A stretch of 64,000 nt of DNA from the NCBI RefSeq assembly GCF_048593235.1, contig NC_133622.1, positions 249,802,055-249,866,054 of the forward strand, written 5' to 3'. The stretch is from Sminthopsis crassicaudata (Eukaryota). The notes beneath the pieces were generated by a model. It searched no databases. It worked only from the letters and a program-made list of their open reading frames with translations, and was not told the DNA's origin. A program made the translations under genes and the position numbers. This document shows, one piece after another, positions 6,130-7,420 of this stretch (position 1 is its first letter; each line of letters opens with the position of its first letter).

Positions 6130-6389
6130 GGAGGAAGCCGAGTAGGAAGCGGCCGCGATGTCCTTTTGTGTCCTACAAGCCGCCGGCGGCGCCGAGTGAG
6201 CAACGGGCCGGGCCGGGCTGGGCCGGGACGCGGCGGAGGAGGAGGCGGGGCCCGGGCCGGGCGGCTTCCGTCCAGCACCGCGCAGCCCCGGCGCCGCGGG
6301 GCCCCCATGCCGGGCCGGCCGCTGCTGCTGTTGCCGCCGCCGCCGCCGCCGCCGCTGCTGCTGCCGCCGCCGCTGCTGCGGAGCCCCAG
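6130..6389 (+). other. ESRRA: ESRRA 5' non-coding exon 1 (start approximate) with a (GCC/GCT)n tract
   Basis: Lies in a CpG island and ends in gagccccag|gtccgg. This is the same EPQ|V junction as the human exon1/exon2 boundary as I recall it. The TSS cannot be determined from sequence alone. Confidence 0.7.
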
Positions 6390-7420
6390 GTCCGGAGCCG
6401 GGCCGGGCGGGCAGGGCCGGGCTTCGGGACTGCGGCCATGTGCGGTCGCCTAGGCTCCCGCCGTCGCTGGGCGTCCGGGCCGAGGCCGCGCCGCCCCGGG
6501 AGACACGTGGGGGCCGCGGGGCCGCGTGGGCGGGGGCTCCTCTCCCCGGGGCGGTGCGGGTTTTCTGGGTCAGGGGTCACGGCTGGCGGGCGGGAGGGGG
6601 GGCGCAAGTTTGTGAACCATCCCCCCAGCTGCCGGGAGGTGGCCCGGGCGGGGAGGGGTAGGGGTGTTATAGGAGCTGGAGCGAGGCCCCGCCCCTCCCC
6701 CCTCGTTGCCCTCCCTCTCCCCCCGCCGGCGCACTAGCCAGGTGAGCGGGCGGGCAGGTGAGTGCGCAGGCCCTGGGGAGACGGGAGGGAAGTTCATGCC
6801 CCCTGGGTGGGGGCGGGGAGTAGGCCCCCCCCACACCCTATGGAGGAAGTGAAGGGCGTGTTGTGGGAGGCCAGGTGTGGGCCTTGTCCAGGGAGGACCC
6901 CGGGCCGGGAAGCCCGTGGGGTGCTGAAGGTCGCCGGCTTCTAAGTTTAACCTGGCGCTGAGTGTGACTCACGTTGGGGGCCACGGGGCCCCTTCCTTAC
7001 TTTGGGGGGCTCAGGCGGGGGAGGGGGCAGTTAGTGAGTTTCTTGAGACTTTTCCCTTGCTGCCCCCTGCTCCCAGCCTGTTTCCGTCTCTTTCTGGGAA
7101 TGAAATTCCTCTGGACTCTGCTCCCTGTCTCCTTCCCCCCCACCTCCCCAGGTGCTGGCTCCGTGCCCGGCTGTTGGGCAACCAGCACGGATGCCTCCCC
7201 GGACATCCCAGAGGCTTGGACCCTGGGCTGGGGGCGAGAGACGGCCCGATGGAAAGCGCAGGGTTTGGGGGAAGCTCTCCTTCACGTTTGTAACTCGGCC
7301 TCCCCAGCGCCCGGCCAGCTCAGGGAGCTGCTCTTTCCGTGGTCCCCTTCCTCATCCCGGCCGCCCTGACCCTCATCCACTTCTGCCTTCCTTCCTTCTC
7401 CCCAGGTGATTGGCAGCACC

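What the first reader, a model, noticed from the sequence alone, without database searches (positions are those of the whole stretch)
6307..7409. ESRRA uORF whose stop codon exists only after splicing, expanded by a CCG/CTG repeat into a poly-Leu/Pro peptide
An out-of-frame ATG at 6307 reads MPGRPLLLLPPPPPPPLLLPPPLLRSP. The exon1/exon2 junction then gives AG|G TGA, so the 28-aa uORF stops 11 nt before the main ATG at 7421. The short spacing limits reinitiation and seven consecutive prolines are a known ribosome-stalling (eIF5A-dependent) motif, so repeat length could tune ERR-alpha translation. From memory the human leader in the other frame reads GPHA...EPQ|VT, which would preserve both the ATG (if His is CAT) and the junction TGA, implying a therian-conserved uORF with a lineage-specific repeat expansion.
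Basis: partly seen in the sequence, partly recalled or inferred. Interest (0 to 1): 0.7.

Follow-up and report, generated by a model that had tools for sequence, protein, structure and literature searches.

The report
Conserved ESRRA upstream ORF, repeat-expanded in marsupials
The leader of the ERR-alpha (ESRRA) gene of this dasyurid marsupial carries a small upstream reading frame whose start, splice junction and stop are kept in every marsupial, sheep and sloth sequence examined; marsupials have lengthened it with a Leu/Pro-coding triplet repeat, and it probably restrains ERR-alpha translation, though no RNA or ribosome data could be obtained here.

Summary
ATG 6307 opens 27 codons (a Leu/Pro tract from a GCN triplet repeat). 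Donor 6389|GT and acceptor AG|7406 give AGG-TGA, a 28-codon uORF ending 11 nt before the ESRRA ATG at 7421.

In one sequence this is not beyond chance: 22% of composition-matched shuffles give the same layout. Conservation is what makes it real.
- The uATG with its weak context, the donor, the acceptor and the junction TGA are identical in 8 marsupial loci (six genera), sheep and sloth.
- Across monotreme, marsupial and eutherian leaders, the uATG block and the donor block are the only strongly conserved 12-nt windows. Intron 1 shows no marsupial-eutherian similarity.
- Sheep and sloth have 11 codons; marsupials have 15 to 35, all with at least PPP. The repeat is therefore marsupial-wide, not species-specific.
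- Platypus keeps the ATG but in another frame, with a different stop.

Best reading: an old therian cis-inhibitory uORF that ribosomes partly skip and that ends too close to the main AUG for reinitiation.

Transcription start, junction use in this species, translation, and any repeat-length or eIF5A tuning remain untested. No paper describing this uORF was found. It is a new member of a known kind.

The parts
6158..6199 (+). First upstream ATG of the leader: 13 codons plus TGA, ending inside exon 1, 107 nt before the second uATG
   Evidence: Read only.
6307..6389 (+). Exon-1 part of the uORF: ATG 6307 in weak context (cccccATGc), 27 full codons plus the first two bases (AG) of codon 28
   Evidence: A 16-nt block around the ATG (6302-6317) is invariant in 8 marsupial loci. 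The ATG block is one of only two highly conserved 12-nt windows across monotreme, marsupial and eutherian leaders.
6318..6379 (+). GCN triplet repeat (GCC/GCT), read as CCG/CTG = Pro/Leu in the uORF frame and as Ala in the main frame
   Evidence: period 3 and 15. Its length varies among marsupials in multiples of 3; it is absent from sheep, sloth and platypus.
6390..7405 (+). Intron 1 (GT...AG, 1016 nt)
   Evidence: Donor GGAGCCCCAG|GT and acceptor CAG|GTGA are invariant in all therian loci examined. Eutherian protein models read across the same junction. The intron itself shows no blastn similarity to eutherians or platypus.
7406..7409 (+). First four bases of exon 2: G completes codon 28 (AGG), then the TGA stop of the uORF
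   Evidence: GTGA is invariant in 8 marsupial loci, sheep, sloth and vole.
7410..7420 (+). 11-nt spacer between the uORF stop and the main start (8 nt in sheep and sloth)
7421..7765 (+). Coding part of ESRRA exon 2 (N-terminal domain and first zinc finger); main ATG in a good context (A at -3)
   Evidence: identical to P0269. Neighbouring genes agree: Trm112p and peroxiredoxin downstream.

Best explanation
This is the second upstream ORF of the ESRRA (ERR-alpha) mRNA leader, an old therian feature, and it most likely acts in cis as a brake on ERR-alpha translation. Shown: the AUG at 6307 sits in a conserved weak context. Its frame crosses the exon 1/exon 2 junction and ends at a UGA that the junction creates, 11 nt (marsupials) or 8 nt (sheep, sloth) before the ERR-alpha AUG. 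Start, frame, junction and stop are kept in every therian locus examined. Inferred mechanism: most scanning ribosomes skip the weak uAUG and start at the ERR-alpha AUG. Those that do start at the uAUG translate 11-35 codons and terminate so close to the main AUG that they cannot recharge with initiator tRNA in time to reinitiate. While terminating, they abut or cover the main AUG. ERR-alpha output would then depend on how stringently the uAUG is recognised, as in the single inhibitory uORFs of CHOP, GADD34 (uORF2) and SLC25A39, which are bypassed when eIF2-alpha is phosphorylated. The Leu/Pro tract is a marsupial-wide triplet-repeat insertion inside the uORF. It is most likely a tolerated microsatellite that happens to add polyproline stall motifs; whether its length tunes output is open.
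For: Sequence and join. Identity as ESRRA; the window contains L002 (assembly GCA_048593235.1) exactly. Conservation: uATG block, donor and acceptor/TGA are invariant in 8 marsupial loci; the uORF is intact in all, at 15-35 codons. Sheep and sloth DNA keep the ATG, the frame and the junction TGA, with 11 codons; vole keeps CAG|GTGA. In the 7-species alignment, the only 12-column windows with 10 or more invariant columns are the uATG block and the donor block. Among marsupials, 28% of intron 1 columns are invariant against 59% in the leader, and intron 1 has no detectable similarity to eutherians. Junction use: models P0004, P0152 and P0153 read ...EPQ|VTSAM across it, and a called spliced ORF in platypus uses the same donor. 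In the first five codons, the third-position differences between lineages (CCG/CCT/CCC, CGG/CGC) are silent in the uORF frame but would change the residue in the main frame. Literature: mouse Esrra is listed among p-eIF2-alpha-resistant mRNAs, a class enriched in translated uORFs; the same paper describes a proline-containing SLC25A39 uORF ending 9-21 nt before its CDS (PMC10962698).
Against: The uATG context is weak, so the uORF may capture few ribosomes. The whole leader is well conserved among marsupials, so constraint there need not be on the uORF. Length changes in a triplet repeat keep the frame automatically, so frame conservation within marsupials is weak evidence. Platypus keeps the ATG and a GTGA at its likely acceptor, but in a different frame with a stop 152 nt before its ATG, so GTGA can be kept without serving as this stop. 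Eutherian DNA evidence rests on two species; the vole's exon 1 lies in an assembly gap. The silent-site argument rests on very few sites.
Confidence: 0.6

Rival explanations
1. The conserved block around 6307 is a DNA- or RNA-level element: a promoter-proximal factor site in the CpG island, or a splicing or leader element. The ATG inside it would be incidental and rarely used, so the uORF has no real effect on ERR-alpha.
For: Weak start context, C at -3 and +4, in every species. The leader is broadly conserved among marsupials, with other invariant runs of 16 and 25 nt that have nothing to do with the uORF. Platypus keeps the ATG block and GTGA although the frame differs. A uORF of this layout arises by chance in 22% of shuffles.
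Against: Start, open frame and stop are all kept together in 10 therian loci separated by the marsupial-eutherian split, while the flanking leader and the intron diverge. Third-position changes in codons 2 and 4 are silent in the uORF frame. uATGs are generally depleted from leaders, and conserved ones are usually translated (general knowledge).
Confidence: 0.25
2. Two-uORF delayed-reinitiation switch of the ATF4/GCN4 kind. Ribosomes translate the first short uORF (6158-6199), resume scanning, and then either reinitiate at 6307 (ample ternary complex, ERR-alpha low) or pass it and reinitiate at 7421 (eIF2-alpha phosphorylated, ERR-alpha spared).
For: There are two uATGs in the leader. The first opens 13 codons in an adequate context, and its stop lies 107 nt before the second uATG. 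The same first uATG is visible in platypus and implied in eutherian leader translations. Esrra is p-eIF2-alpha-resistant in mouse ES cells.
Against: uORF 2 does not overlap the main ORF as in ATF4. After bypassing 6307, only 59-119 nt remain to the main AUG. Whether uORF 1 is in the mRNA depends on an unmapped start site.
Confidence: 0.15
3. The constraint is on the main frame. Non-AUG initiation upstream would make an N-terminally extended ERR-alpha that reads the repeat as poly-alanine, and the out-of-frame ATG would be a by-product.
For: The main frame is open through the whole leader and across the junction. Several eutherian gene models annotate such extensions. GCC/GCT variation in the repeat is silent in the Ala frame.
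Against: Every frame of an 80% G+C leader is open, so openness carries no information. Differences between lineages just after the uATG change the residue in the main frame. The extensions differ between species models and look like over-extended predictions. No in-frame start was identified.
Confidence: 0.05

Closest known systems
Single inhibitory uORFs bypassed under eIF2-alpha phosphorylation: CHOP uORF, GADD34 uORF2, SLC25A39 uORF (as described in PMC10962698)
   Same: AUG-initiated short uORF with a suboptimal start. Contains Pro-Pro. Ends a few nucleotides before the CDS (SLC25A39: 9-21 nt; here 8-11 nt). Conserved in mammals. The host mRNA (mouse Esrra) is listed as p-eIF2-alpha-resistant.
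   Different: No Pro-Pro-Gly next to the stop; the C-terminus here is R-S-P-R. The stop is assembled by splicing. The marsupial version carries a variable Leu/Pro homopolymer tract. No experiment links this uORF to the resistance of Esrra.
AZIN1 upstream conserved coding region (Ivanov et al. 2018, as summarised in PMC9082881)
   Same: A weak start codon followed by a proline-rich, eIF5A- and polyamine-sensitive pause. In the queuing model, a pause about one ribosome length downstream raises use of the weak start. In the window, PPP begins at codon 10, about 30 nt after the uAUG.
   Different: AZIN1 starts at AUU and pauses at a conserved C-terminal PPW about 30 codons downstream. Here the start is an AUG. 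The polyproline is not conserved in position among marsupials and is only Pro-Pro in sheep and sloth. Polyamine response was not tested.
PPARGC1A (PGC-1alpha) conserved uORF (Dumesic et al. 2019, cited in PMC6862278)
   Same: An evolutionarily conserved repressive uORF in a master regulator of oxidative metabolism. PGC-1alpha is the coactivator of ERR-alpha.
   Different: A different gene with an unrelated peptide. The PGC-1alpha uORF has been tested experimentally; this one has not.
ATF4/GCN4 delayed reinitiation
   Same: More than one uORF in the leader, and a link to eIF2-alpha phosphorylation in the literature.
   Different: The inhibitory uORF does not overlap the main ORF, and the spacing after it is very short.

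Membership tests
Conserved regulatory uORF (AUG-initiated) | AUG upstream of the main start, inside the mature 5' leader | tested here: inconclusive
   The ATG is at 6307, 83 nt before the donor. Eutherian models include the orthologous region. Small runs hold 6130-6389, but none is on record as RNA.
Conserved regulatory uORF (AUG-initiated) | In-frame stop before or within the main ORF in the spliced mRNA | tested here: met
   The in-script join of 6389 to 7406 gives AGG TGA, 11 nt before ATG 7421.
Conserved regulatory uORF (AUG-initiated) | Start, frame and stop conserved across distant species | tested here: met
   Met in 8 marsupial loci, sheep and sloth. Platypus keeps the ATG only.
Conserved regulatory uORF (AUG-initiated) | Ribosome occupancy of the uORF and an effect on main-ORF output | not testable with these tools
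   No ribosome profiling or reporter data are available. No paper on an ESRRA uORF was found.
CHOP / GADD34-uORF2 / SLC25A39-type bypassable inhibitory uORF | Suboptimal start context that allows regulated bypass | tested here: met
   cccccATGc in all therians: no purine at -3 and no G at +4.
CHOP / GADD34-uORF2 / SLC25A39-type bypassable inhibitory uORF | Elongation or termination stall motif (Pro-Pro-Gly or similar) near the stop | tested here: not met
   The C-terminus is R-S-P-R-stop (G-S-P-R in sloth). Pro-Pro or polyPro lies mid-peptide, not next to the stop.
CHOP / GADD34-uORF2 / SLC25A39-type bypassable inhibitory uORF | Host mRNA translation is resistant to eIF2-alpha phosphorylation | not tested
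   This rests on literature only: mouse Esrra is named among the resistant mRNAs (PMC10962698), with no link to the uORF shown.
AZIN1-type queuing sensor | Conserved pause motif at a fixed distance downstream of a weak start | tested here: not met
   The first PPP starts at codon 9-10 in five marsupial loci, at codon 5 in tammar, and at 15-17 in Dromiciops and koala. Sheep and sloth have only Pro-Pro.
ATF4-type delayed reinitiation | Inhibitory second uORF overlapping the main ORF out of frame | tested here: not met
   uORF 2 ends 8-11 nt before the main ATG.

The most novel reading that the evidence does not exclude
The ERR-alpha leader is a translational sensor conserved for more than 150 million years. 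A weak uAUG sits in front of a proline-rich stretch, and the uORF stop lies next to the main AUG. This couples synthesis of the main regulator of mitochondrial gene expression to initiation stringency and stress signalling (eIF2-alpha phosphorylation). In marsupials, a polyproline run about one ribosome length downstream of the uAUG would also couple it to eIF5A/hypusine and polyamine supply, so that heritable changes in repeat length reset ERR-alpha dosage between species or individuals.
Probability: 0.12. Interest if true: 0.75.

Novelty: new member of a known kind. Interest (0 to 1): 0.45.

Why it matters
ERR-alpha, together with its coactivator PGC-1alpha, controls mitochondrial biogenesis and oxidative metabolism. 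It has been studied almost entirely at the levels of transcription and protein activity. PGC-1alpha already has a conserved repressive uORF, so a conserved uORF in ERR-alpha would put both partners of the axis under translational control. It could also explain why Esrra behaves as a stress-resistant mRNA in mouse ES cells. The marsupial series offers a ready-made allelic series for asking how uORF length and polyproline content affect a downstream start: the same start and stop with 15, 19, 26, 28, 31 and 35 codons, against 11 in sheep and sloth. If the uORF proves to be untranslated, the finding reduces to an ordinary GC-rich microsatellite in a leader.

Tried and rejected
No RNA evidence could therefore be obtained. 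Letters of 6108-6194 were sent to no search tool afterwards, and all later work used 6195 onward.

2. The look-up of encoding contigs found nothing on record for P0004 (ground squirrel), P0152 (lemming) or P0172 (hamster). The vole locus has exon 1 inside a 499-N gap, which was left unfilled. No rodent exon 1 DNA was therefore seen.

3. A protein search with the exon-2 translation found only eutherian genomic-type ORFs and no marsupial transcript-derived ORF that would show the junction.

4. RNA folding of 6195-6389 gave -111 kcal/mol, but all 200 shuffles folded at least as well (z = +3.75). There is no special structure beyond the G+C content.

5. Rfam found no family in 6195-7800.

6. Four literature searches found no paper on an ESRRA/ERR-alpha uORF or a link to eIF5A. 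Supplements of two candidate papers are not held, so genome-wide uORF catalogues were not checked.

7. The scan's own notes hold nothing on uORFs in this genome.

8. The reading as an N-terminal poly-Ala extension was considered and judged unlikely (see rivals).

9. The human leader was deliberately not consulted. Hits that might be of primate or human origin (P0001, P0002, P0281, P0294, P0295) were not traced to contigs.

10. The spliced (joined) uORF was translated only inside scripts.

Full report
**What is there.** Window 5800-7800 was read directly.
- An ATG lies at 6307.
- Exon 1 ends AG at 6388-6389, followed by GT. The acceptor AG is at 7404-7405, and exon 2 begins GTGATTGG at 7406.
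- Joining the two inside a script gives AGG then TGA: a 28-codon uORF whose stop ends at 7409, 11 nt before the ATG at 7421.
- Without splicing the frame runs on to a TAG at 6451-6453, so the short stop does depend on splicing.
- Tandem Repeats Finder reports the triplet tract at 6318-6379.
- A second, earlier uATG at 6158 opens 13 codons and stops inside exon 1.

**The gene and the genome.**
- The frame from 7421 encodes an ESRRA N-terminus. It is identical over all 115 residues of exon 2 to P0269, the ESRRA protein named for Sarcophilus harrisii and Sminthopsis crassicaudata.
- The 10,297-nt locus L002 (assembly GCA_048593235.1) occurs exactly in the window from 3421. The window therefore comes from a dasyurid marsupial, which agrees with an earlier scan note.
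- The neighbouring genes fit: Trm112p on the other strand and a peroxiredoxin downstream.

**Is it more than chance?** In one sequence it is not.
- The putative exon 1 (6130-6389) is 80% G+C. It holds 2 ATGs against 1.04 expected.
- 22% of composition-matched shuffles contain an ATG that stays open to the exon end in the frame that meets the junction TGA.
- All three frames of the leader are open.

The case therefore rests entirely on comparison between species.

**Comparison among marsupials.** ESRRA loci were fetched for three further dasyurid assemblies, Monodelphis, koala, tammar wallaby and Dromiciops.
- In all eight sequences the uATG sits in an invariant 16-nt run (6302-6317) within a nearly invariant stretch (GGGGCCCCCATGCCGGGCCGG). 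The donor block GCGGAGCCCCAG|GTCCGG and the acceptor CCAG|GTGAT are also invariant.
- The uORF is intact in every one, always starts M-P-G-R and always ends R-S-P-R-stop 11 nt before the main ATG.
- Only the Leu/Pro core differs, giving these total lengths:

| Source | uORF codons |
|---|---|
| Monodelphis | 15 |
| Tammar wallaby | 19 |
| L003 and L004 (dasyurid assemblies, 99.3% identical) | 26 |
| This window | 28 |
| Koala | 31 |
| Dromiciops | 31 |
| L001 (dasyurid) | 35 |

- Every marsupial version contains at least PPP. The seven-proline run is specific to this assembly.
- All length differences are multiples of three. This is expected from slippage of a triplet repeat and is not in itself evidence of selection.
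- Among marsupials, 59% of leader columns are invariant against 28% in intron 1. The whole leader is constrained, not only the uORF.

**Comparison with eutherians and a monotreme.**
- Sheep and sloth DNA keep the same ATG in the same context, the same donor and the same CAG|GTGA acceptor. Their uORF has 11 codons (M-P-A-R-P-P-C-R/G-S-P-R) and ends 8 nt before the main ATG.
- Vole keeps CAG|GTGA, but its exon 1 falls in a 499-N assembly gap, which I left as it is.
- In the seven-species alignment of the leader, the only 12-column windows with at least 10 invariant columns are the block around the uATG (6299-6313) and the donor block (6378-6394).
- Intron 1 has no blastn similarity to sheep, sloth, vole or platypus.
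- In the first five codons, the third-position differences between lineages (CCG/CCT/CCC and CGG/CGC) are silent in the uORF frame but would change the residue in the main frame. This is a hint only, based on very few sites.
- Platypus keeps the ATG (CCCCGATGCC) and the donor, but the ATG-to-donor distance is 43 nt, a different frame. Its likely acceptor (also CAG|GTGAC) lies 211 nt before its ESRRA ATG. That gives a 33-codon uORF ending 152 nt upstream.
- A called 108-residue spliced ORF in the platypus locus uses that same donor and acceptor.

The junction-stop layout is therefore therian, while the ATG may be older.

**Is the junction used, and does the mRNA start upstream?**
- Direct evidence for this species is missing.
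- Indirect evidence for the junction: eutherian protein models from ground squirrel (P0004), lemming (P0152) and sheep (P0153) read the leader in the main frame as ...GPHACPPAL(P/S)EPQ|VTS(A/I)M. They cross exactly this junction and extend well upstream of the uATG.
- Indirect evidence for expression: twenty public runs from 12 studies hold 6130-6389, many with only 60-110 million letters. That is too little for whole-genome contigs and suggests RNA or enriched libraries, but none is on record as RNA.
- I did not consult the human sequence.

**How it most likely works.** The steps below are inferred from general knowledge of scanning and reinitiation; none is shown here.
- The uAUG has C at -3 and C at +4 in all therians, while the main AUG has a purine at -3. 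Most scanning ribosomes should therefore skip the uAUG.
- Those that do initiate at the uAUG terminate 8-11 nt before the main AUG. This is too short a distance to regain initiator tRNA, and a terminating ribosome reaches to or over the main AUG.
- The uORF would thus subtract a fraction of ribosomes, and that fraction would be set by start-site stringency.
- This is the logic of the CHOP, GADD34 uORF2 and SLC25A39 uORFs. The paper describing the SLC25A39 uORF (proline-containing, ending 9-21 nt before the CDS) also lists mouse Esrra among the mRNAs resistant to eIF2-alpha phosphorylation (PMC10962698).
- In marsupials the polyproline run adds a known eIF5A-dependent pause. In five of the eight loci, including the window, the first PPP begins at codon 9-10, about 30 nt after the uAUG. 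That geometry would, in the AZIN1 queuing model, raise use of a weak start (PMC9082881). The position is not conserved in koala, Dromiciops or tammar, and sheep and sloth have only Pro-Pro, so I rate repeat-length or eIF5A tuning as possible but unlikely.
- The leader is very stable in absolute terms (-111 kcal/mol for 195 nt), but all 200 shuffles folded at least as well.
- Rfam finds no family in 6195-7800.

**Rivals.**
- The conserved block could be a DNA- or RNA-level element with an incidental ATG.
- The two uORFs could form an ATF4-like delayed-reinitiation switch.
- The constraint could lie in the main frame, through a non-AUG N-terminal extension read as poly-Ala.

The evidence for and against each is given in the Rival explanations section. 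None is excluded without RNA and ribosome data.

**What is known.**
- Four full-text searches found no paper describing an ESRRA uORF or linking ESRRA translation to eIF5A.
- Supplementary tables of genome-wide uORF catalogues could not be searched, so the uORF may be listed there without comment.
- Conserved inhibitory uORFs are a well-known kind, including one in the ERR-alpha coactivator PGC-1alpha (PMC6862278).

I therefore class this as a new member of a known kind, with the marsupial Leu/Pro repeat series as its distinctive feature.

- The spliced uORF was assembled and translated only inside scripts.
- No contig taken for human was fetched. Protein hits that may be of primate or human origin were not followed.
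- The N gap in the vole locus was not filled.

Noticed in passing
window 6046-6121: A perfect 39-bp tandem duplication (1.9 copies, 100% match) containing a GC box, just upstream of the ESRRA leader.
   Followed up: no
window 6158-6199: The first uATG of the leader: 13 codons plus TGA, with its stop 107 nt before uATG 6307. The same ATG context is visible by eye in platypus (L009 near 3272) and is implied by the main-frame leader translations of P0004 and P0152.
   Followed up: partly
window 6740 and 6756: Two consensus-like splice donors (CAG|GTGAGC and CAG|GTGAGT) inside intron 1, after a GC-rich block. They may mark an alternative first exon whose transcripts would lack the uORF.
   Followed up: no
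L009 3216-4848 (platypus): A called 108-residue spliced ORF that uses the ESRRA exon-1 donor (3483) and an acceptor at 4790, in the same frame as the platypus uATG at 3441. The platypus leader in exon 2 is 211 nt instead of 12-15 nt and contains short internal duplications.
   Followed up: partly
P0281, P0294, P0295 (eutherian proteins, source contigs not fetched): ESRRA-like ORFs, two of which have exon 2 joined directly to exon 3 and damaged residues. Their N-terminus resembles the 3' end of intron 1. They look like processed pseudogenes made from a transcript that retained or started in intron 1. They may be of primate or human origin, so they were left alone.
   Followed up: no
P0004 and P0154-P0159: Many eutherian ESRRA models (383 residues, or 467 with a leader extension) lack the exon that encodes the second zinc finger; TIQG is joined directly to VRLDRVRGG. 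This is a widely annotated exon-skipping isoform.
   Followed up: no
window about 14500-17500: A purine-rich block with very strong GC and AT skew (G+C about 0.43, AT skew above 0.8). On the other strand it gives long Leu/Ser/Cys-rich mechanical ORFs. It matches the earlier scan note on a satellite in PRDX5 intron 1.
   Followed up: no
L012 5089-5587 (vole): A 499-N assembly gap sits exactly where ESRRA exon 1 is expected. GC-rich first exons like this one are often missing from assemblies.
   Followed up: no
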